The notes beneath the pieces were generated by a model. The model ran no database searches, was not told the DNA's origin, and worked only from the letters and a program-made list of their open reading frames with translations. A program made the position numbers and the translations under genes. DNA of 63,692 nucleotides, filler included, from Octopus bimaculoides (Eukaryota): the NCBI RefSeq assembly GCF_001194135.2. It is 5 parts of 5 records of this genome, joined end to end, with 100 filler letters (N's around TTAATTAATTAA, not from the genome) between each part and the next. Parts side by side here need not be neighbours in the genome. Positions count along the whole stretch, not along the records: positions 1 to 20,859 come from NC_069003.1; 4 more parts are not named here. One strand, 5' to 3'. Shown here one piece after another: positions 1 through 10,786 of the stretch. The number at the start of each line of letters is the position of its first letter. Position 1 is the first letter of the stretch.

Positions 1-23
1 GAAAAACCCCTCATACATGTTTT

Positions 24-83
24 GCGCACTCGCGCTTGGTAGTCGCAGGATCGACTAGTCACGACTCGCTAGCGCGAGTGCGC
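24..83. repeat. GC-rich nested inverted repeat (cruciform/hairpin)
   Basis: Perfect 13-bp arms GCGCACTCGCGCT (24-36) / AGCGCGAGTGCGC (71-83) enclosing an inner TAGTCG (40-45) / CGACTA (52-57) hairpin. Confidence 0.8.
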
Positions 84-120
84 GCACCGGGACCACTCTT
101 CTTGAATAGTACCCACTTGT

Positions 121-344
121 CTTCTTATTTCTTTACTGCCTACAAGGGGCTACACACAGAGGGGACAAACAAGGATTAAATCAATTATATCGACCCCAGT
201 GCGTAACTGGTACTTATTTAATCAACCCCGAAAGAATGAAAGGCAAAGTCGACCTCGGCGGAATTTGAACTCAGAACGTAGCAGCAGATGAAATACCGCT
301 AAGCATTTCGTCCGGCGTGCTGACGTTTCTGCCATCTCGCCGCC
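121..344 (-). mobile_element. tRNA-headed SINE, family 1 (GGCGAGCTGGCAG...GTCGACTTTGCCTTTCATCC)
   Basis: Near-identical to copies at 10375-10786, 19511-19741, 33424-33572, 43831-44040 and 55045-55400. B-box-like GAGTTCAAATTCC. Confidence 0.85.
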
Positions 345-675
345 TTACCCAATTGTCTTCTACTGTACCATTTTGGGATTCCAGCATCTTTCATATTTGC
401 GTATTTGTACTTTCGAAACACTGGCTTTACATATTTTTCGCATGTTTTCACTTTTCAGGACTCCCCCTTTTTCACATTGTTCCTGTTTTTGATTGCTAAA
501 TGTTTTGTTCATATATTTTTGCTCAACGTTTATACATACAAACACACATTTTGTTCTCTACAAGAACAGACATTTCTCTACATGTTTCCTCCAAATTTGT
601 ACTCTGCATTATTCATACAACTGTTTTGCTGTTTCAGTCTTCTGTGCCCTCTTATCGCACATGTACTTCGCTTAC

Positions 676-744
676 CTTGATTTTGTTCGACCGGTTGGCG
701 ATCTTTCGTGCGCACGCGTACTGATTACATTATCGTATAGTGTG
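676..744 (-). other. candidate first (non-coding) exon of a leftward gene
   Basis: Strong minus-strand donor AAG|GTAAGC at 676/675, directly downstream of an inverted copy of the 1243-1316 promoter segment. Confidence 0.35.
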
Positions 745-1204
745 TTTATGTTTTTAAATGACTTGAAAATATGAAAAGACAACATTAAATAGAAAAAAAA
801 AATGAATGGCTCACTAAATTTAAACCTTCTCCCTTCAGATTCGTACAGTTCTCAAACTTTAAACGCATAAACACATATAGGAAAGTGGGTTATACATCAT
901 TAGATGTATACCTGACTTTCCAATATAAAATTAAGAATTAACGGAACGCTGAACTCCAGACTATCAACATAACAATTATTTATTTAAGGTGGAATATATA
1001 TACATCATTAGCTCTTGTTTGTTGAGACGTCTTCTGTGTGTGTGAGCATGGTTGTTGGGACGTTGGTATGTAGATGTGAGCGAGCTGTCTAGCGTAAGTT
1101 CGAAAGATGGAGAGAGACAGCTAAACACGTCCTTGCTCAATCGCTGGCCAGCAAGAAAGAGACAGAATGAAGCGGGAAAGCTTGGTTGTTGAATTCCACG
1201 CATG

Positions 1205-1316
1205 CGTGAGACTACGCATGCGCACGACGTTACTACACACATTATACGATAATGTAATCAGTATGCGTGCGCACAACGACCGGAAGTTATGGGATCTAGT
1301 ACCGAAAGATCGCCAA
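1205..1316. promoter_or_regulatory. CpG-rich housekeeping-type promoter
   Basis: NRF1-like CGCATGCGCA (1215-1224) and ETS CCGGAAGT (1280-1287) in a CpG-rich patch within AT-rich DNA. Confidence 0.55.
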
Positions 1317-2005
1317 GACTTGATCTAGCCATCTCTCGCACACCTGCGGCAGCGAATACCATGAGGTTACGCAGAAGATGAACATGGTTCTTTCATCAAC
1401 CTCTTTCCATTGTTATTCAATTTGTATATATTTGAGACCGAGAGTAAAAGTATTTAAAGTTTCAGTTTGTTCTATGAATTCTTTGTCGAATGACATATTA
1501 CAGCCTTCTGAACAGGGTCATCTTTAGATGGCTTCAACCTGAGAACATCACCACTAAACCTTCAACAGCCGGAGAAAGTTCAAAAGGTCAGCTCATTCTT
1601 AATAATCTGTAAGAACAGGGAGAATAAAACAAAAGACTTTAAATTTGAATTTTAAAATACTGATTTTTCTACGACTAAAAATTCCTCAAAGTGGTGCTCC
1701 AGCATGGCCGCAGTCTAATGACTGAGACAAGTAAAAAAAAAAAAAAAATTCTGGGGTCAATACATTCAACTAAAAATTCCTCAAGACGGTGCCCCAGCAT
1801 GGCCGCAGTCCAATGACTGAAGCAAGTAAAGAAATTTTTACAAAATATAAAAAACCCTCCAAAAAAAAAACCCAAAAAATATAACCAATTAACTAAAGGC
1901 TTTTGTTCTAAGGGGCTTTTGTCCGGATCCCTAGATGATTATAATATGTATCTACCCCTTTCCAAGATTAGTTTCTTTCATATATTATTATTATTATATG
2001 CCCGT

Positions 2006-2285
2006 GGGCATATGGCGTAGTGGTTAAGAGCGCAGCTACTAACCCCAAGATTCCGAGTTCGATTCCAGGCAGTGACCTGATTATTAATAATAATTAATTC
2101 TGGTTTTATTGGCCACAAGGGCTAATATAAATTAAAAACATATAAAGACAAAGACAGGACGAAGGTTACAAAGGGTTTCGTCCGAAAAGAAAACGTTAAC
2201 ATATACCACACACTCATATATACACGCTCAAACACAGGTTCGAAATTTCCTCAGGACACCTGATGAAGGCTGGAGGGTATATATA
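2006..2285 (+). mobile_element. tRNA-headed SINE with Penelope-like tail (family 5), disrupted
   Basis: A box TGGCGTAGTGG, B box GAGTTCGATTCC, tail ACACCTGATGAAGGCTGGAGGGTAT. Sister copy at 18096-18370. Confidence 0.7.
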
Positions 2286-3009
2286 TATTACATTCGCTGC
2301 TTTCTTCCAAGCAATCTAGTGCTCTTAGCTTAGTTTTTCCTTGGGGCTGGCCAGATTGGAGCAATCTCGAGTATAATCAGCCGAAATTGCGAAGATAATC
2401 TGGAACTCGACTGAGGAAAGAAAACTTCGAATGACCCATCCTTGTTTTCTTTGTATCGTCTATCTTGATGTTTTGGTGTTCCATTTTTGTGTCACCTAAC
2501 TNNNNNNNNNNNNNNNNNNNNNNNNNNNNNNNNNNNNNNNNNNNNNNNNNNNNNNNNNNNNNNNNNNNNNNNNNNNNNNNNNNNNNNNNNNNNNNNNNNN
2601 NNNNNNNNNNNNNNNNNNNNNNNNNNNNNNNNNNNNNNNNNNNNNNNNNNNNNNNNNNNNNNNNNNNNNNNNNNNNNNNNNNNNNNNNNNNNNNNNNNNN
2701 NNNNNNNNNNNNNNNNNNNNNNNNNNNNNNNNNNNNNNNNNNNNNNNNNNNNNNNNNNNNNNNNNNNNNNNNNNNNNNNNNNNNNNNNNNNNNNNNNNNN
2801 NNNNNNNNNNNNNNNNNNNNNNNNNNNNNNNNNNNNNNNNNNNNNNNNNNNNNNNNNNNNNNNNNNNNNNNNNNNNNNNNNNNNNNNNNNNNNNNNNNNN
2901 NNNNNNNNNNNNNNNNNNNNNNNNNNNNNNNNNNNNNNNNNNNNNNNATTTCATCCGGTTTAATCGTAATTTATACGCATATATTGTTTATATAATAAAT
3001 TACGCTGTG

Positions 3010-3340
3010 CGTATCTATGTGTGTAACAATTTTAGAGTTCGGATTCTAGAGTTAGGGTTAGGGTTAGGGTTAACAGTCTAGTTAGGGTTAGGGTTAGGGG
3101 ATTAATACGATATACACCGTTACAGCGCTAACTGTTTTCAACTGAATAGACGTCAGTGATTAGTAGAAATTATCGAAATAAGACAATTTTTTACATGAAA
3201 TAAATTCGAATACAAAAATTTTTTTCTGTTCTATAACACAAAATAGATAAGTATACGAAGTTTGAAAGTCTTTCGGTACCAAAAACACTACATAAAACAT
3301 AAATGAAAACTGGTGCCCCGTTTTGACAGGAACACATAGA
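3010..3340. mobile_element. MITE containing (TTAGGG)n tracts, related to the 55773-56365 family
   Basis: About 3165-3310 is nearly identical to about 56195-56340. Two (TTAGGG)3 tracts at 3050-3100. Left end lost in an N gap. Confidence 0.7.
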
Positions 3341-3543
3341 AATAGAACGTTAAGAAGAAATATATTCGAAGAAAAACCAGTTTAGTATTTAAACTTATGA
3401 TGACCTCAGCAGATAACGAAAAAATAAAAAATTCTACGTCACGATATTTAGTTATCTAACTATTAATATCTGCTGAAAAGGACTTTGAAAAATTACTCTT
3501 ACTAGCACGGTTATTTTGAAAATTGTATATTTTCCTAAAACAT

Positions 3544-3746
3544 TTACTCTTTTACTTGCTTCAGTCATTTGACTGCGGCCATGCTGGAGCACCGACTTTA
3601 GTCGAGCAAATAGACCCCGGGACTTATTCTTTGTAAGCTTAGTACTTATTCTATCGGTCTCTTTTGCCGAACCGCTAGTGACGGGGACATAAACACACCA
3701 GCATCGGTTGTCAAGCAACGCTAGGAGGACAAACACAGACACACAA

Positions 3747-3785
<39 letters not shown>

Positions 3786-3902
3786 CGACGGGCTTCTTTC
3801 AGTTTCCGTCTACCAAATCCACTCACAAGGCTTTGATCGGCCTGAGGCTATAGCAGAAGACACTTGCCCAAGGTGCCACGCAGTGGGACTGAACCCGGAA
3901 CC
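3544..3902 (-). mobile_element. SINE family 2 (GGCGCAGGAGTGGCTGTGTGG...CAGTCAAATGACTGAAACAAGTAAAAGAG)
   Basis: Matches full-length copies at 49949-50349 and 53903-54328. Internal (CA)/(TA) microsatellite. Confidence 0.85.
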
Positions 3903-4904
3903 NNNNNNNNNNNNNNNNNNNNNNNNNNNNNNNNNNNNNNNNNNNNNNNNNNNNNNNNNNNNNNNNNNNNNNNNNNNNNNNNNNNNNNNNNNNNNNNNNN
4001 NNNNNNNNNNNNNNNNNNNNNNNNNNNNNNNNNNNNNNNNNNNNNNNNNNNNNNNNNNNNNNNNNNNNNNNNNNNNNNNNNNNNNNNNNNNNNNNNNNNN
4101 NNNNNNNNNNNNNNNNNNNNNNNNNNNNNNNNNNNNNNNNNNNNNNNNNNNNNNNNNNNNNNNNNNNNNNNNNNNNNNNNNNNNNNNNNNNNNNNNNNNN
4201 NNNNNNNNNNNNNNNNNNNNNNNNNNNNNNNNNNNNNNNNNNNNNNNNNNNNNNNNNNNNNNNNNNNNNNNNNNNNNNNNNNNNNNNNNNNNNNNNNNNN
4301 NNNNNNNNNNNNNNNNNNNNNNNNNNNNNNNNNNNNNNNNNNNNNNNNNNNNNNNNNNNNNNNNNNNNNNNNNNNNNNNNNNNNNNNNNNNNNNNNNNNN
4401 NNNNNNNNNNNNNNNNNNNNNNNNNNNNNNNNNNNNNNNNNNNNNNNNNNNNNNNNNNNNNNNNNNNNNNNNNNNNNNNNNNNNNNNNNNNNNNNNNNNN
4501 NNNNNNNNNNNNNNNNNNNNNNNNNNNNNNNNNNNNNNNNNNNNNNNNNNNNNNNNNNNNNNNNNNNNNNNNNNNNNNNNNNNNNNNNNNNNNNNNNNNN
4601 NNNNNNNNNNNNNNNNNNNNNNNNNNNNNNNNNNNNNNNNNNNNNNNNNNNNNNNNNNNNNNNNNNNNNNNNNNNNNNNNNNNNNNNNNNNNNNNNNNNN
4701 NNNNNNNNNNNNNNNNNNNNNNNNNNNNNNNNNNNNNNNNNNNNNNNNNNNNNNNNNNNNNNNNNNNNNNNNNNNNNATAATTTTAATCTTCGGATTTTT
4801 TTAATATGCTAGACCACTGGTTTTAATTGATTAATATCAATTTCTACCCTTATTAATAAATTTTATATATATATGCATATATGTATTCTTTTATTTTTTT
4901 AATT

Positions 4905-5052
4905 CTTTTACGTATTTCAGATTGCTGCGGCCCGCACCGCTTTTAGTCGAATAAATCGACTCCAGGACTTATTCTTTGAAAGCCTAGTACTTATTCTATC
5001 GGGATCTTTTGCCGAACCGCTACAGGGACATAAACACACCAACATCGGTTGT

Positions 5053-5102
<50 letters not shown>

Positions 5103-5430
5103 CGATGTGGTTGGGAAGCAAGCTTCTTACCGCACTGCCACTCCTGCGCCTTCTCACCATACGGCCACTCCTGTCACATGTATATATGTATGCATGCATG
5201 TATGTATGTATGTGTGTGTGTTTGTGTTTTTGTCTGTGTTTGTCTCCCCATCACCACATAACAACCGGTGTTGGTGTATTTACATCCCCGTAACATAGCG
5301 GTTCGGCAAAGAGTCCGAGAGAATAAGTACCAGGTTTTAAAAGATAAGTCCTGGAGTTGATTTGTTCGGCTAAAAATTCTTCAAGGCGGTGCTCCAGCAT
5401 GGTCTCGGTCAAATGACAGAAACAAATAGC
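4905..5430. mobile_element. two SINE family 2 copies in inverted orientation
   Basis: Minus-strand tail at ~4905-5055 and plus-strand tail at ~5220-5430. Confidence 0.75.
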
Positions 5431-5770
5431 ATAAAGTAGAAGAATACAGAAATGCAACGAATGGCTATGGAGGTTCAGTTGTGTAAAATGAGAATCAAAG
5501 AGGTTCATGGGTAAAAAAGAAAATGGTTGAGAACCTCCAGAGTAAACATTCAAACATCATTGTAATCTTTCCAAATTCTGCTGCATTTCACATGGAATTT
5601 TTGGTCCTCCAAAATAATCTTAGTTCTAAGTCGACCAACCTTTCTTTAGCAGTAAATTTCGGCCTGAAAAATTCGACTTGTATACCGGAGAATACGGTGC
5701 TTTGTTTCATTGACGCTTGAAAACGATGGCATGAAAGACAAATAACGAGAAAGAATTCAGTGAAATTGAC

Positions 5771-5829
5771 TTTATTAATAATAACAATAACCTTAAAAAT
5801 AATAATTACTTAACAGTACGGTTTTTATT
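5771..5829 (-). terminator. candidate polyadenylation signals of CFAP57
   Basis: Two AATAAA on the minus strand (forward TTTATT at 5824-5829 and 5771-5776), about 90 and 145 nt after the stop. Confidence 0.45.
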
Positions 5830-5920
5830 GCTGAATGTAAAAACCGGCCGTTTCGTTTCGTTTTGTTTGAATGATTGAAGTCCAATGATCAAAAATTAGA
5901 TCCATTTTCATTTTTTTTTT

Positions 5921-8900
5921 TCATTTAGCTCGTTCCATTATAGACAGCAAACGACGGTTCTTTTCTCTCTCCAACTGCAACACTTCTCCCATTTTATTGC
6001 ATTTATTTACCAGGACCTCATTCTCCAGAGAAGCGTTTTTCACGGTGCGGTTCAACTGATGCTTCAGTTTGTGTATGCTGTATTCGAAATGGTTCCGCTG
6101 CCGACCCCATTCCACCTGTATGTTGGGATCTGTAGTGACAATCTTATCGACATTCCTCTCGATGTATTTAGTATAAAGGGCTTTGATACTGCTCTTTAGC
6201 CTCATCGGGTCTTGTATGAAGGACGTGCAGTCGATAAGATCAGCGCAGAACCTATCCAACAAAGCTGTTTTCCGATGTAGCGCCATCCGTTCTTTGCTCA
6301 ATTCTAGAGAAGTGGCCGCTAGCTTCTGTTTCGTTTCTGCTGTCGTGTGGTCCATGATGATAAACTGTTGAGTGAAGTTTTCCAGTTCGCTTTGCATAGC
6401 TTTGATTTGTTCCTTCATGTTACTAATTTCCGTCTCCCTCTGTTCGATTTGTTGTCTCAGTTCGATGATCTTGTTGTATTCAAGTTCGCATTTCAGTTTC
6501 TCGATTTCGTGATTCTTCAACTTCAGATCATAGAACCGTTTCTCTTCGTCCTGTAGTCCGTGATCTTGGTTCTGTAGTTCTTTCTTTAAACTCTGTATAT
6601 CTTTCTCCAGATTACCTATAATAATGTTCAGTCTCTTTATCTCGAGTTTATACTTCTTGCACTCTTCCTTGCTTTCTTTTAGTTCTTTGGGGAAAGCTAA
6701 GAGCTTCTTCTTCAAAATACTGTTTTCATCTTTGATTTTAGAATTGGAATATCTCTCATGATACAATTGCTGTTCGTAATCGGTTTTTGTGAAGACGATT
6801 TCCATATCTGCATCTTCCTCGATCTGTTTTTTCATTTCCTCGTATTCTTTCTGTTGCAGCATAATATCCTCCTGACGCTGTTCCAATTTCTTCTCCACTT
6901 CTTGAAGTTTCCCTTCGTAGTGTGCTGTCAATTGGTCTTGTAGAAGTTCTTGCTTTTCTTCCAGTTCTTGTACCTGCTGGTCGTGTTCTTCTTGCAGTTT
7001 TAACAACCTGTTGTGAAGATCCTTGAATTTTTCATATTCTTCTAATAACTTTTTATCGTTGGCAGATTCGATGAACTGAAGTTCTCTGCAGTGCTTTTCC
7101 ATAATTTCTGTCATTATCTCGTCATGCCTAGATTCCTGTTTGCTTTTGTCATTCTGTAGGGCTTGGTTTTTGGTTTTCAAATTTTCCATTTCTTGAATAA
7201 ATGTTTCGGTCATCTCTCTTATTTTGTCGTTGTAGCTCATGTCTTTGAGGTGCATCTGGTATTCGTTTTCCATGTTAAGTTCTTCTACACGAGATTTCAA
7301 CTCTGCAAGCCAACCATTTTTTTCTTCCAAATCGAACCTTGGGATTAAGATCTCCTCGGACCAAATAGTACTCCGGTCACGTTTCAAAGTCCGACTTTCA
7401 GCAACGTTTACCTTCCATATTGCAATTGAAGCATCTTTTGATGTTGAAATTAAATATCGATCATCAGTTGTAAAAGTCATGTGTGTAGTTTCGAGACTAT
7501 GACATGGATAATCAAGCCATCTTCCCGGAAGCATTATAGGATACTCCAAGCTTCTTATATAACCGTTATTAGTTCCAACAAATAGCATTGTATTGGACCA
7601 CGACAGAGCAATTGATTTGAAAAGCACGTCACCCGATGGAAATGTTCGCAATATGTCAGACTCGTGGATTTCTTTCATAGAATAATCTGAGCCTACGGCA
7701 TAGAAATTCTTGTTTTCGAAATTAATGATGACATCGTTATAGGCGCAGGATTTCAAGACGCACTGACCAATTCGTTTCCCGGTTTTTAATTCCCAGTCAT
7801 AAACTGCCCCATCCAAGCCGCATGAGATTAGATTATTATCATCCATACACCAGGCGGTAGCTTGAACTTTACCATTGTGACCTTTCAGGTTGGCCAGCAT
7901 TTCGAAAGTAATCGACGAGTATACCTGTATAAAGTTGTTGTTGACCGCCGCGAACATGTGCCCACCTCGGCTGAAGTTACAATGTGTACACATACGGATA
8001 TTGAATTCCTTAAACTGTTTGAAGTCGTCTCTGAGAATATACATGAAACGTAATTTGTCGCTGAAACCTGCCAGAAGAAATAGTCCCATTGGGTGCATAG
8101 ATATGCTATAGACTTCTTCTGAAAAGTCTTTAGAAAGTTCTAAGGTAAACGTTTCATAGTTCCACACTTTTATGGAACCGTCCAGAGAGCTGGTTGCAAT
8201 GAAAGGCTTCCACGAGCAGACACAACACCCAGTGACAGATTTGTAATGGAAAGGCTGTACTAAAACATCAAACACGCTCGTCTGCTTCATATATTTCGTT
8301 TCCGGTGGATTAACTTGTGTAGAATACATTTGTTTCATATTGGTGCTAATAACGAGAACATCCTCCGATGGATTCACCACCATCCATTTTATAATCTGGT
8401 CGCATAGTTTGTTATTCTCCAATGTATCTGACGGCAGCAAAACATCCCTAACAAACTTGTAATTATCTTTGTCTTCAACTCTTTCAAAAAACTGTACATA
8501 TTGCGTACCACACGCTGTAATAAACCCTTTAGAATAACTGACGATTGCTGTCACTCCATGCGTCCTTGCGACATCGTTTGGAAGATTCAAATATTGGAAT
8601 ACGTTAAAATCGAGTCTTAAATCCGTACCTTCAATAAACAACACTCTTCCATTGCCTGTACCCACCAAAAGACGCTCGTTCGCATCCCAACAATAGCATT
8701 TGAAATCTCGAGGTTCGATCTTCGGGAAATTGAACTGTTTGAAGTTACCTTCGACGAATCGGAATGATTTTAGAAGTCCATTGCCAAAAGCATACACGTT
8801 AAGATGATCCTGAGGATTGAAGCTGATAAAATTAAGAGTCTCTGGTACCAGAGAAGTCGTGACTTTGGCTGTTATGAGTAGTCTCGATTTTTCCCATGAC

Positions 8901-9298
8901 CAGTAAAGGAGAGTTCGTGATGGGTCGTCACATATGGCTATGATACATCGAGAATCAGATGAAAAAGATAAACTAAGGATTTTACAAGAAAATAATTCTG
9001 GACAAACTAATGTCTTCTTTTTCCGCAAAGCAAACAAATCAAGAATGTTTATAGACGGTTTTTCGTATTTCAAACCAACAGCAGTATAGTTACGGTTAGG
9101 ACTAATAGCCATGGCAGTTATTTCAGCTCCTTTCTCTGACGCTAAGAGCAATCGCATAGTCTTCTGTTCGGTGTTAAAAAAGACACAGTAACAACCACAC
9201 GGATAAAGGATCGTTTGTTCATCAAGATAAAAAACATTGCTAGAAATATCCGAGTTGATTCCAATCAAATATTTTATTGTCGCTGTAGAGATAGCCAT
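5921..9298 (-). CDS. CFAP57: cilia- and flagella-associated protein 57 (WD40 repeats plus long C-terminal coiled coil), single exon
   Basis: Uninterrupted 1125-aa ORF. The N-terminus (NVFYLDEQTILYPCG, AMAISPNRNY), the WD motifs (LKGHNGKVQ, LISCGLDGAVYDW, FSRGGHMFAAV) and the coiled coil (RVEELNMENEYQMHLKDMSYNDKIREMTETF) match CFAP57/WDR65 orthologues from recall. Confidence 0.93.
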   Translation of the reverse strand: MAISTATIKYLIGINSDISSNVFYLDEQTILYPCGCYCVFFNTEQKTMRLLLASEKGAEITAMAISPNRNYTAVGLKYEKPSINILDLFALRKKKTLVCPELFSCKILSLSFSSDSRCIIAICDDPSRTLLYWSWEKSRLLITAKVTTSLVPETLNFISFNPQDHLNVYAFGNGLLKSFRFVEGNFKQFNFPKIEPRDFKCYCWDANERLLVGTGNGRVLFIEGTDLRLDFNVFQYLNLPNDVARTHGVTAIVSYSKGFITACGTQYVQFFERVEDKDNYKFVRDVLLPSDTLENNKLCDQIIKWMVVNPSEDVLVISTNMKQMYSTQVNPPETKYMKQTSVFDVLVQPFHYKSVTGCCVCSWKPFIATSSLDGSIKVWNYETFTLELSKDFSEEVYSISMHPMGLFLLAGFSDKLRFMYILRDDFKQFKEFNIRMCTHCNFSRGGHMFAAVNNNFIQVYSSITFEMLANLKGHNGKVQATAWCMDDNNLISCGLDGAVYDWELKTGKRIGQCVLKSCAYNDVIINFENKNFYAVGSDYSMKEIHESDILRTFPSGDVLFKSIALSWSNTMLFVGTNNGYIRSLEYPIMLPGRWLDYPCHSLETTHMTFTTDDRYLISTSKDASIAIWKVNVAESRTLKRDRSTIWSEEILIPRFDLEEKNGWLAELKSRVEELNMENEYQMHLKDMSYNDKIREMTETFIQEMENLKTKNQALQNDKSKQESRHDEIMTEIMEKHCRELQFIESANDKKLLEEYEKFKDLHNRLLKLQEEHDQQVQELEEKQELLQDQLTAHYEGKLQEVEKKLEQRQEDIMLQQKEYEEMKKQIEEDADMEIVFTKTDYEQQLYHERYSNSKIKDENSILKKKLLAFPKELKESKEECKKYKLEIKRLNIIIGNLEKDIQSLKKELQNQDHGLQDEEKRFYDLKLKNHEIEKLKCELEYNKIIELRQQIEQRETEISNMKEQIKAMQSELENFTQQFIIMDHTTAETKQKLAATSLELSKERMALHRKTALLDRFCADLIDCTSFIQDPMRLKSSIKALYTKYIERNVDKIVTTDPNIQVEWGRQRNHFEYSIHKLKHQLNRTVKNASLENEVLVNKCNKMGEVLQLEREKNRRLLSIMERAK

Positions 9299-9549
9299 TT
9301 TGAATAGAAATAAATTCCCTGACTTTTCTTGTCGCTTTTGTTATAAGTTAAAAATGAAATTAAATCTCAAAACGAGACGTCACATGATGCTAGTCAGGTG
9401 ACCCAAATTTTATTCTAATGGACAGCCTCCCATTTTTTCCTATTTTTTCGACATTTTGATATTTATTTATTCATTCATTCATTCATTTATTTATTTATTT
9501 ACTAAAGTTCTGTTATGCTACCAACACACACGGACACACTCACACACAC

Positions 9550-9950
9550 ATTTCCGACGAATGAAAAGCATACATCTCCCAACGAATTTCACTTACATGC
9601 ACGCATCTTTTAACAAATTTAAGGCACCTACTCACAAACACACATACATATCTTTTAACGAATTTGTGGTACACACATACACACACTCACATACTTTTGA
9701 TGAATTTAAGGTAGAAATACACACACGCATCTTTCGACGAATTAAAAACACGCACGTCCACATACACACGCATACGAACACACTCACATACCACAACACA
9801 TCTACATACATATATACGCGCACACAACTACGTACTCACACACACACACACACACACGTTTTGAGTTATTTACAAAACACCACACACATATACACACACC
9901 TTTTAAGAAATTTATGGTTCACACGCACATACTTCTTTTGACAAACTTAA
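9550..9950. repeat. array of about 8 copies of a ~15-bp motif (CTTTTAACGAATTTA-like) separated by variable CA-rich spacers
   Basis: Copies near 9551, 9578, 9606, 9651, 9694, 9730, 9900 and 9935. Confidence 0.7.
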
Positions 9951-10374
9951 TACACACTTACACAAACATATCTTTATATCTATCATTTCATAATAGAGTT
10001 ATTATTAATAAACTCTTTTAACATTGTTCATAGCAATCTGCTCAAAACCTCTCTTGCTTCTATAGCATAAACTTTCTGTTTTAAACTAATTTAAAAACAT
10101 TCCATCAAAATTTACACCTTACACCAGATAGTTATTTTGCTAAGTTTTTCATTATTTTCAAAATTAATTGAAACAAAGATGGTGAATTTCAAGAGAAATA
10201 TGGTGATACAAGGATTAAATATTTTATGACTCTATCAGTCTCTGTGTTCTGTGACTCACCAGAGACCATTCCTTGGTTCTACGATACAAACTTCCTGTTT
10301 CAAACTGATCTTAATTAAAACCTTCCATCAAAATTTCACCTTAATTTATGTTCCAAACACCAGCTCAATAATCC

Positions 10375-10786
10375 CTTCTCCTGTAGACACAAAGCCTGAA
10401 ATTTGGAGGAAGGGATTAAGTCAATTACACCGACCCCAGTGCGTAACTGGTACTTATTTAATCGACTCCGAAAGGATGAAAGGCAAAGTCGACCTCGGCG
10501 GAATTTGAACATATGAAATACCGCTAAGCATTTCGCCTGGCATGCTAATGATTCTTATTTCTTTATTGCCCACAAAGGGCTAAACATAGAGGGGACAAAC
10601 AAGGACAGACAAAGGGATTAAGTCGATTACATCGACCCCAGTGCGTAACTGGTACTTAATTTATCAACCCCGAAAGGATGAAAGGCAAAGTCGACCTCGG
10701 CGGAATTTGAACTCAGAACGTAAGGGCAGACAAAATACCGCTAAGCACTTCGCCTGGCATGCTAATGATTCTGCCAGCTTACCACC
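10375..10786 (-). mobile_element. two tandem SINE family 1 copies
   Basis: The segment CGACCCCAGTGCGTAACTGGTACTT...GTCGACCTCGGCGGAATTTGAAC occurs twice. Confidence 0.85.

What the first reader, a model, noticed from the sequence alone, without database searches (positions are those of the whole stretch)
5921..9298. Intact intronless CFAP57: probable functional retrogene
Seen: a 3.4-kb uninterrupted ORF with downstream AATAAA signals, in a genome where the neighbouring GRK has short exons and kb-scale introns. Established: animal CFAP57 genes are normally multi-exon, and CFAP57 is an axonemal protein needed for cilia and sperm flagellar motility. Inference: this is a retrocopy kept under selection, possibly sperm-specific or replacing the parental gene. 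It looks diverged from orthologues as I recall them.
Basis: partly seen in the sequence, partly recalled or inferred. Interest (0 to 1): 0.7.

Follow-up and report, generated by a model that had tools for sequence, protein, structure and literature searches.

The report
Conserved intronless CFAP57 paralogue in octopus
This is a real, selectively maintained, single-exon octopus gene for a shortened copy of the cilium/sperm-tail protein CFAP57, but it is the old founder of a tandem gene cluster in a lineage where every CFAP57 gene lacks introns, not a recent retrocopy of an intron-bearing parent.

Summary
The 3,378-nt ORF (window 5921-9298, minus strand, 1125 codons) is real and encodes a full-length CFAP57-type protein: two beta-propellers plus a long helical rod. 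Its best sequence and fold matches are CFAP57 chains in axoneme structures. The window comes from Octopus bimaculoides chromosome CM046623.1.

Against its O. sinensis orthologue, dN/dS is 0.11 (95% bootstrap 0.07-0.16), so the gene is functional.

The "retrocopy of a multi-exon parent" reading holds only in part.
- Haliotis CFAP57 has at least 18 coding blocks, so intron loss is derived.
- The canonical octopus CFAP57 (1255 aa, 1.1 Mb away, dN/dS 0.05) is also single-exon in O. bimaculoides, O. vulgaris and Argonauta.
- The window gene is one of five single-exon "short" paralogues within 150 kb. The array is conserved in O. sinensis.
- A cuttlefish has a single-exon short orthologue that is the window protein's reciprocal best hit. 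The short lineage therefore predates the octopus-cuttlefish split.
- No poly(A) tail remnant remains.

Best reading: one ancient RNA-mediated loss of introns in the cephalopod stem, then DNA duplications. The window gene is the conservative founder of the short subfamily. The other copies evolve faster (dN/dS 0.5 to 1.05). Where the gene is expressed and what it does in the axoneme were not tested.

The parts
5921..9298 (-). Single-exon coding sequence of a short CFAP57 paralogue, 1125 codons plus a TGA stop. It corresponds to O. bimaculoides CM046623.1 11,686,000-11,689,377.
   Evidence: ORF listing and translation. Exact match to a called gene in GCA_001194135.2. dN/dS 0.11 against O. sinensis.
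7406..9286 (-). N-terminal tandem beta-propellers, aa 5-631. The Pfam EML-type propeller 1 covers aa 59-304 (window 8387-9124) and propeller 2 covers aa 359-630 (window 7409-8224).
   Evidence: Pfam PF23409 and PF23414. The AlphaFold2 model has all-beta structure at about pLDDT 90 over aa 5-631. Coordinates were converted.
5927..7339 (-). C-terminal long alpha-helical (coiled-coil) rod, aa 654-1124. It ends about 70 residues short of canonical CFAP57.
   Evidence: AF2 helices 654-912, 930-1025 and 1058-1124. Collinear alignment to human CFAP57 residues 285-1125. The canonical C-terminal segment is missing.
5696..5913 (-). 3' flank (probable 3'UTR) that is homologous among all Octopus short paralogues.
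   Evidence: blastn of flanks and the seven-sequence alignment A1.
5771..5776 (-). AATAAA polyadenylation hexamer 145 nt after the stop, inside an invariant TAATAAAGTCAAT motif.
   Evidence: Invariant in all seven Octopus short-copy 3' flanks. Position confirmed.
5824..5829 (-). Second AATAAA, 92 nt after the stop. It is not conserved in paralogues, which read GATAAA there.
5718..11368 (-). Block collinear with the O. sinensis orthologous locus. The gene and its near flanks are 94.6% identical, and a further 1.4 kb upstream is 85% identical.
   Evidence: blastn of L001 against L008. The conversion is window = 19299 minus the L001 coordinate.

Best explanation
SHOWN. The ORF is a functional single-exon gene of Octopus bimaculoides that encodes a divergent, C-terminally shortened CFAP57 (two beta-propellers plus a helical rod). 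It is the slowest-evolving member of a five-gene cluster of single-exon 'short' CFAP57 paralogues on the chromosome that also carries the single-exon canonical CFAP57, 1.1 Mb away. The short lineage also exists, single-exon, in a cuttlefish. INFERRED (history). A multi-exon CFAP57 lost all of its introns in one RNA-mediated event in the cephalopod stem. That event was either a retrogene that replaced its parent or conversion of the gene in place by a cDNA. The intronless gene then duplicated at the DNA level into a long (canonical) and a short lineage before octopuses and cuttlefish split. Within the Octopus lineage the short gene later spawned four faster-evolving tandem copies. The window gene is the conservative founder copy and not a fresh retrocopy. 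INFERRED (function). [quoted passage not shown] It lacks the conserved C-terminal end, which in Tetrahymena sits by radial spoke 1 of the next 96-nm repeat and also contacts radial spoke 3. It therefore most likely acts as a specialised subunit. It could be the heterodimer partner of the canonical protein, as paralogue pairs are in Tetrahymena, Trypanosoma and Leishmania. Alternatively it could be the CFAP57 of one axoneme type, such as the sperm flagellum.
For: Identity and fold. Pfam finds EML-type propellers. phmmer gives E=4e-274 to human CFAP57 and E=5e-194 to Chlamydomonas FAP57. The AF2 model has mean pLDDT 76.7, and its eleven best PDB fold matches are all CFAP57-type chains in 96-nm repeat structures. 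Constraint. dN/dS is 0.109 [0.071-0.163] against O. sinensis, with no indels. Family and intron status. Five short copies lie at 11.663-11.814 Mb and the canonical copy at 10.588 Mb of CM046623.1. Each is an uninterrupted ORF, except that the N-terminal ~97 codons of P0007 are hidden by an assembly gap, which is what its annotated 'intron' spans. O. vulgaris long and short copies, Argonauta long and short copies, and the cuttlefish-like short copy are also single-exon. Haliotis CFAP57 is multi-exon. Phylogeny. In the NJ trees, all cephalopod copies are monophyletic, and the long clade and the short clade (Sepia plus octopods) each have 100% bootstrap support. The short clade shares two 7-aa deletions and the missing C-terminus. 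The Sepia short form and the window protein are reciprocal best hits. Timing. Four-fold-site distances are 0.20-0.52 among the five O. bimaculoides copies and about 1.2-1.3 between Octopus and Argonauta; dS between O. bimaculoides and O. sinensis is about 0.12. The window copy has the lowest dN to Argonauta and to Sepia. The tandem order is conserved in O. sinensis. Function by homology. CFAP57 spans the 96-nm repeat, is an adaptor for dyneins g and d, and forms an A/C paralogue heterodimer in Tetrahymena (PMC10504270). Two different paralogue chains are also present in the T. brucei and Leishmania structures.
Against: There are no expression data for this gene. No transcript-derived member was found in its 90% cluster and no paper mentions it. 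A whole-genome search for a degraded multi-exon parent could not be run; only annotated proteins were screened. Retroposition and in-place cDNA conversion cannot be told apart, because synteny of the canonical copy with other molluscs was not resolved. Among paralogues, homology outside the CDS is limited to about 225 nt of the 3' flank and almost nothing 5', which also fits RNA-mediated copying. The NJ trees place Argonauta P0009 with Octopus P0002 (98-99% bootstrap), which disagrees with the silent-site timing; this may be long-branch attraction. The species behind the presumed decapod long form (P0057) is unknown. The axonemal role rests on homology alone.
Confidence: 0.75

Rival explanations
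1. One reading: a relatively recent functional retrocopy of an intron-containing octopus CFAP57 that inserted here, perhaps replacing the parent.
For: The CDS is single-exon whereas Haliotis CFAP57 has at least 18 coding blocks. The gene is under purifying selection.
Against: The canonical copy is itself single-exon in three octopod genomes and is retained. The gene sits in a tandem array shared with O. sinensis. A single-exon cuttlefish orthologue exists. Silent sites are saturated against both the long form and Sepia. There is no poly(A) tract.
Confidence: 0.05
2. Serial retroposition: each short paralogue is a separate retrocopy of another family member's mRNA that happened to land in the same region.
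For: Paralogue homology covers the CDS and about 225 nt of 3' flank and stops within a few bases 5' of the ATG.
Against: Three copies lie head-to-tail on one strand within 26 kb, and two more lie on the other strand within 19 kb. The order is conserved between species. Homology continues 60-90 nt past the invariant AATAAA and does not end in an A-run. With silent divergence of 0.2-0.5, neutral flanks are expected to have decayed anyway.
Confidence: 0.08
3. The intronless state arose by gradual, intron-by-intron loss in the cephalopod lineage, with no RNA-mediated event, followed by tandem duplication.
For: Nothing direct. It cannot be excluded, because no cephalopod with an intermediate gene structure was available to examine.
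Against: All of roughly 18 or more introns are absent from every long and short copy examined in Octopus, Argonauta and a cuttlefish. Simultaneous complete loss is the signature of a cDNA-based event (established knowledge; the concept of retrogene replacement is reviewed in PMC5803294).
Confidence: 0.07
4. The ORF is a non-functional relic or an annotation or assembly artefact, such as cDNA contamination.
For: No expression evidence was obtainable.
Against: dN/dS is 0.11, with third-position bias 21/14/79 and no indels across 1125 codons. The orthologous locus with collinear flanks is present in an independent O. sinensis assembly. An O. vulgaris orthologue falls in the same 90% cluster.
Confidence: 0.02

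Closest known systems
CFAP57 / WDR65 / FAP57 (Chlamydomonas BOP2), the axonemal adaptor for inner dynein arms g and d
   Same: It has the same architecture: tandem EML-type beta-propellers followed by a roughly 470-residue helical rod. It aligns collinearly from residue 6 to 1091 with human CFAP57. Its best sequence and fold matches are CFAP57 chains in human, bovine-sperm, mouse and Chlamydomonas 96-nm repeat structures.
   Different: It is only 45-48% identical to other animal CFAP57. It has changed 37% of positions that are invariant across 16 other animals. It lacks the last ~70 residues, including a conserved coiled-coil segment, and has two 7-aa deletions. It coexists with a canonical orthologue, whereas humans have no CFAP57 paralogue (PMC7444499).
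CFAP57 paralogue pairs in protists: Tetrahymena CFAP57A/C, T. brucei CMF5/CMF6, the Leishmania pair, and Chlamydomonas FAP57/FBB7
   Same: These are lineage-specific duplications of CFAP57 that yield two or more co-existing proteins. In Tetrahymena the two form a heterodimer on protofilaments A3-A4 (PMC10504270). Two distinct chains are also modelled in the T. brucei and Leishmania structures.
   Different: The duplication here is independent and restricted to cephalopods. All copies are intronless. In Octopus the family has expanded to five tandem short copies. Whether the long and short proteins pair is untested.
Retrogene replacement ('orphaned retrogenes'), e.g. amphioxus SYCP1
   Same: A large gene that is normally multi-exon is present only as single-coding-exon copies throughout a lineage, and no multi-exon parent has been detected (PMC5803294).
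   Different: This applies to the founder of the cephalopod family and not to the window gene itself, which is a later DNA-level duplicate. Relocation from the ancestral locus has not been demonstrated. The single-exon gene has since diversified into a family.

Membership tests
CFAP57/WDR65 protein family | Two N-terminal WD40 (EML-type) beta-propellers | tested here: met
   Pfam PF23409 (aa 59-304) and PF23414 (aa 359-630). The AF2 model is all-beta over aa 5-631 at about pLDDT 90.
CFAP57/WDR65 protein family | Long C-terminal coiled-coil rod collinear with CFAP57 | tested here: met
   AF2 helices span aa 654-1124. phmmer alignment 249-1091 matches human 285-1125.
CFAP57/WDR65 protein family | Closest relatives by sequence and by fold are bona fide CFAP57 proteins | tested here: met
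   E=4e-274 to human CFAP57. The top 11 Foldseek PDB hits are all CFAP57-type chains. All named homologues are CFAP57.
CFAP57/WDR65 protein family | Conserved extreme C-terminal segment (Haliotis residues 1140-1209) | tested here: not met
   It is absent from the window protein and from the whole short clade. No remnant was found in the 3' flank.
CFAP57/WDR65 protein family | Location on the doublet microtubule and a requirement for inner dynein arms g and d | not testable with these tools
   This needs proteomics, cryo-ET or genetics. It is known for Chlamydomonas and Tetrahymena.
Processed retrogene (this gene as a direct retrocopy) | Intron-free CDS where homologues elsewhere have many introns | tested here: met
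   The window has a single ORF. Haliotis has at least 18 coding blocks in 14.2 kb.
Processed retrogene (this gene as a direct retrocopy) | An intron-containing parental gene in the same genome | tested here: not met
   The only other O. bimaculoides CFAP57 proteins found are four short copies and the canonical copy, and all are single-exon or interrupted only by an assembly gap. Caveat: only annotated proteins were screened, not the raw genome.
Processed retrogene (this gene as a direct retrocopy) | Poly(A) tract at the 3' end of the copied segment | tested here: not met
   The 11-A run directly after the stop is part of an A-rich UTR shared with the paralogues. No A-tract lies where paralogue homology ends.
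Processed retrogene (this gene as a direct retrocopy) | Flanking target-site duplications | not tested
   Given the age (silent sites are saturated against Sepia), short duplications would not have survived. No dedicated search was made.
Processed retrogene (this gene as a direct retrocopy) | Insertion at a site unrelated to its source gene | tested here: not met
   It lies in a same-strand array with two paralogues, 106 kb from two more and 1.1 Mb from the canonical gene, all on one chromosome.
Tandem (DNA-level) duplicate gene family | Adjacent paralogues on the same strand, with the array conserved in a sister species | tested here: met
   P0007, P0008 and the window gene are all on the minus strand within 26 kb. 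The order window gene then P0008 orthologue is conserved in O. sinensis.
Tandem (DNA-level) duplicate gene family | Homology between copies extends beyond the transcribed unit | tested here: inconclusive
   Homology runs about 225 nt 3' of the stop and 60-90 nt past the invariant AATAAA, but almost nothing is shared 5'. The true transcript ends are unknown.
Retrogene replacement (for the founder of the cephalopod CFAP57 family) | Only single-exon copies in the lineage, multi-exon in outgroups, and the parent lost | tested here: inconclusive
   Every Octopus, Argonauta and cuttlefish-like copy examined is single-exon, and Haliotis is multi-exon. Whole-genome absence of a parent, the Nautilus gene structure and relocation from the ancestral locus could not be tested.

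The most novel reading that the evidence does not exclude
Coleoid cephalopods replaced the ancestral multi-exon CFAP57 with an intronless copy. They then evolved a second, C-terminally truncated CFAP57 that pairs with the canonical protein, an animal parallel to the paralogue heterodimers of ciliates and kinetoplastids, or that builds a distinct axoneme such as the sperm flagellum. Octopus further spawned tandem copies that are kept open while evolving at dN/dS of about 1, which would point to sexual or other diversifying selection on the inner-dynein-arm docking system.
Probability: 0.25. Interest if true: 0.6.

Novelty: new member of a known kind. Interest (0 to 1): 0.4.

Why it matters
CFAP57 is a single-copy gene in humans, where mutation causes primary ciliary dyskinesia. 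[quoted passage not shown] An animal lineage with a canonical copy plus a constrained, truncated paralogue and several fast-evolving copies is a natural experiment. It shows which parts of this axonemal 'ruler/adaptor' can vary, and it allows a test of whether paralogue heterodimers, so far seen only in protists, also arise in animals. It also adds a clean case of complete intron loss in a large gene of about 20 exons across coleoid cephalopods. I found no paper that mentions CFAP57 in octopus. For genome annotation, it corrects three under-called gene models and one spurious intron.

Tried and rejected
The public annotation calls only this gene over window 1-19298. The ten largest other ORFs have no Pfam hit. 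Small exons therefore cannot be fully excluded.

(2) I looked for a relic of the canonical C-terminus in the 3' flanks of four short copies. No tblastn hit had an E-value below 0.28.

(3) I looked for retroposition hallmarks. There is no terminal poly(A). The A-run after the stop is shared UTR sequence.

(4) I looked for expression evidence. There is no Logan member in the gene's 90% cluster. No paper mentions CFAP57 in octopus. The O. sinensis gonad transcriptome paper does not mention CFAP genes.

(5) I considered that P0007 might carry a real intron. This was rejected, because the 'intron' is an assembly gap (N-run at L004 12224-12879).

(6) I considered that P0008 might be a decaying pseudogene, given dN/dS of about 1. 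This was rejected. A neutral simulation expects 13.7 stop codons, and none of 5000 replicates was stop-free.

(7) I tried to compare synteny of the canonical copy with Haliotis. This is not informative.

(8) Rfam found only a tRNA-like hit inside a SINE-like repeat.
Full report
**Observation.** The piece holds one outstanding ORF, at 5921-9298 on the minus strand. It runs ATG to TGA over 1125 codons. The next-longest ORF is 213 aa and lies in CAC/CAA low-complexity DNA. AATAAA hexamers lie 92 and 145 nt after the stop. The sequence matches exactly a called gene on Octopus bimaculoides chromosome record CM046623.1 (GCA_001194135.2), at 11,686,000-11,689,377 on the minus strand. No other gene is called across window 1-19298, and the ten largest other ORFs have no Pfam hit. 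The flanks consist of SINE-like interspersed repeats, microsatellites and three assembly gaps.

**What the protein is.** Pfam finds two EML-type beta-propellers, at aa 59-304 and 359-630. phmmer against PDB sequences gives E=4e-274 to human CFAP57 (8j07_i4), 1e-273 to the bovine sperm chain, 5e-194 to the Chlamydomonas FAP57 chain, and weaker matches to the Trypanosoma, Leishmania and Tetrahymena paralogue pairs. An AlphaFold2 model was built on a 41-sequence alignment (mean pLDDT 76.7). It shows all-beta structure for aa 5-631 and helices from 654 to 1124. Its eleven best Foldseek hits in the PDB are all CFAP57-type chains in 96-nm axonemal repeat structures. Family membership is therefore secure.

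**How far it has diverged.** The protein is 45-48% identical to other animal CFAP57. It keeps 308 of 489 columns that are invariant in 16 non-cephalopod animals. It also lacks the last ~70 canonical residues, including a conserved coiled-coil segment, and has two 7-aa deletions.

**It is one of a family, and all members lack introns.** The homologue search returned four more O. bimaculoides proteins on the same chromosome. Contig look-ups place them as follows:

| Copy | Position on CM046623.1 | Strand |
|---|---|---|
| P0007 | 11,663,037-11,669,004 | minus |
| P0008 | 11,670,242-11,673,607 | minus |
| window gene | 11,686,000-11,689,377 | minus |
| P0005 | 11,795,212-11,798,580 | plus |
| P0002 | 11,810,727-11,814,098 | plus |

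- tblastn shows each copy as one uninterrupted block.
- P0007's annotated 'intron' is an assembly gap.
- P0008's true ORF is 1121 aa, not the annotated 983 aa.
- A sixth gene, 1255 aa long, is 61% identical to Haliotis CFAP57 and is therefore the canonical orthologue. It lies at 10,587,602-10,591,369 on the same chromosome and is also a single exon.
- The canonical gene is likewise single-exon in O. vulgaris and in Argonauta hians.
- Short copies are single-exon in O. vulgaris, O. sinensis, Argonauta and on a cuttlefish-like contig. That contig's protein is at least 90% identical to an Acanthosepion pharaonis protein.
- By contrast, Haliotis CFAP57 spans 14.2 kb in at least 18 coding blocks.

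**Genealogy.** NJ trees with 100 bootstraps make all cephalopod copies one clade (100%). That clade splits into a long clade (100%) and a short clade (100%). The long clade holds Octopus, Argonauta and a transcript-sized Logan protein, P0057, that is probably decapodiform. The short clade holds Sepia plus all octopod short copies. The short clade also shares the indels noted above. The Sepia short form and the window protein are reciprocal best hits.

**Timing.** Four-fold-site distances are 0.20-0.52 among the five O. bimaculoides short copies. They are 1.17 between the window gene and Argonauta P0003, and 1.33 between the Octopus and Argonauta canonical genes. They are saturated against Sepia and against the long form. 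dS between O. bimaculoides and O. sinensis or O. vulgaris orthologues is about 0.12.

The long/short split is therefore older than the octopus-cuttlefish divergence. The five-fold expansion happened within the Octopus lineage, after it split from Argonauta and before O. bimaculoides and O. sinensis separated. The window copy has the smallest dN to Argonauta (0.185, against 0.29-0.36 for the others) and to Sepia (0.387, against 0.44-0.53). It is the conservative founder copy.

**Selection.** dN/dS values are (NG86, bootstrap intervals):

| Copy | dN/dS | 95% interval |
|---|---|---|
| Window gene vs its O. sinensis orthologue | 0.109 | 0.071-0.163 |
| Canonical copy | 0.047 | 0.030-0.072 |
| P0002 lineage | 0.49 | 0.36-0.68 |
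| P0008 lineage | 1.05 | 0.78-1.40 (on the shorter annotated ORFs) |

- The YN00 estimate for the window gene is 0.18.
- Window-gene differences by codon position are 21/14/79, with no indels.
- Synteny confirms orthology. Window 5718-11368 is collinear with the O. sinensis locus, and the next short gene downstream is shared.
- The P0008 lineage keeps intact ORFs of 1121 and 1134 codons. A neutral simulation expects 13.7 stop codons, and none of 5000 replicates was stop-free.

**Retrogene or not.** The gene has the one classic property of a retrogene, an intron-free CDS. It fails the other properties that could be tested.
- There is no intron-bearing parent among annotated octopod proteins.
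- It is linked to its relatives in a tandem array.
- There is no poly(A) tract. The 11-A run after the stop is shared, A-rich UTR sequence.

Paralogues share about 225 nt of 3' flank with an invariant TAATAAAGTCAAT motif. That homology runs 60-90 nt beyond the hexamer. They share almost nothing 5' of the ATG. This is compatible with DNA duplication followed by decay of neutral flanks, and it does not require serial retroposition.

The most economical history has three steps. First, one RNA-mediated wipe-out of introns occurred in the cephalopod stem. Second, a local DNA duplication produced the long and short genes. Third, tandem expansion followed in Octopus. Two questions could not be decided with the data reachable here. 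One is whether the first step was retroposition with loss of the parent ('retrogene replacement', a concept described in PMC5803294) or cDNA conversion in place. The other is whether Nautilus still has introns.

**Likely mechanism of the protein (inferred from homology).**
- CFAP57 forms a dimer that runs along protofilaments A3-A4 for almost the whole 96-nm repeat.
- It contacts the I1 complex, the N-DRC, CCDC96/113 and CFAP337, and it acts as an adaptor for inner dyneins g and d.
- Its C-terminus sits near radial spoke 1 of the next repeat, and the C-terminal region also contacts RS3.
- In Tetrahymena the dimer is made of two paralogues (PMC10504270).
- Chlamydomonas has a second paralogue, FBB7, that increases when FAP57 is lost, and humans have no paralogue (PMC7444499).
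- Two different paralogue chains are also modelled in the T. brucei and Leishmania structures. The human and Chlamydomonas structures carry two chains of one sequence.

The octopus short protein keeps both propellers and the rod but lacks the C-terminal end. I therefore propose that it is a specialised subunit. It could be the partner of the canonical protein or the CFAP57 of a particular axoneme type. The sperm-specific idea remains a hypothesis. No expression information could be found.

**Verdict.** The gene itself is already annotated as 'CFAP57-like'. The family-level picture appears to be undescribed. That picture is that all coleoid CFAP57 genes examined are intronless, that an old truncated paralogue exists, and that Octopus carries a tandem expansion with a gradient from strong constraint to dN/dS of about 1. 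It is of moderate interest.

Noticed in passing
L004 5398-8763 (O. bimaculoides P0008, 12.4 kb downstream of the window gene) and L008 19464-22868 (its O. sinensis orthologue): This neighbouring short CFAP57 copy evolves at dN/dS 1.05, with differences spread evenly over codon positions (129/121/94). Both species nevertheless keep intact ORFs of 1121 and 1134 codons. A neutral simulation expects 13.7 stops, and 0 of 5000 replicates were stop-free. It is a candidate for positive or diversifying selection.
   Followed up: partly
L004 5398-5811; L006 9860-10000; L008 19464-19607; L004 12224-12879: Several public gene models are under-called. P0008 is annotated at 983 aa but its ORF is 1121 aa. 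O. vulgaris P0004 is annotated at 1076 aa but its ORF is 1123 aa. The O. sinensis neighbour is annotated at 1086 aa but its ORF is 1134 aa. P0007's only 'intron' spans an N-run assembly gap that hides its N-terminal coding part.
   Followed up: yes
L003 1-2446 (CM046623.1 about 11,785,212-11,787,657): A TTL-domain (tubulin tyrosine ligase-like) gene lies 7.5 kb upstream of short copy P0005. It is another gene with a possible axonemal-tubulin role next to the cluster, and this may be coincidence.
   Followed up: no
L010 10001-13768; L005; L012: The canonical octopod CFAP57 is itself unusually diverged. It keeps 410 of 489 positions that are invariant in 16 other animals and carries small lineage-specific insertions, although its dN/dS is only 0.05.
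   Followed up: partly
window 2502-2947, 3903-4777, 15185-15753: These are three runs of N (assembly gaps) in the piece. They account for the very low 'GC' values in the composition profile.
   Followed up: yes
window 11935-12266: An 82-bp unit is repeated 4.1 times in tandem at 95% identity. Related single units occur at 10127-10266 and 10967-11106.
   Followed up: no
window 13137-13208 (-), with repeats at 160-351, 10410-10510, 10602-10793, 11239-11430 and inverted at 19509-19742: An Rfam tRNA hit (44 bits) lies beside a repeated element. Several families of 100-260-nt interspersed repeats resemble tRNA-derived SINEs. None of them interrupts the ORF.
   Followed up: partly
window 18371-18848: Imperfect CAC/CAA/CAG triplet-rich low-complexity DNA creates spurious ORFs of about 210 aa on both strands. 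These ORFs have no Pfam hit.
   Followed up: yes
L007 (ENA ERZ21867824, contig ctg101322l, 65.9 kb): A contig filed under a metagenome assembly is evidently cuttlefish nuclear DNA. Its CFAP57-short protein falls in the same 90% cluster as an Acanthosepion pharaonis protein, and an RVT_2 retroelement ORF lies nearby.
   Followed up: partly
NJ trees compared with silent-site distances: Argonauta P0009 groups with Octopus P0002 at 98-99% bootstrap. Silent-site distances, however, say that all Octopus short copies split after the Octopus-Argonauta divergence. The cause is either long-branch attraction between fast copies or gene conversion among the Octopus copies. This is unresolved.
   Followed up: partly
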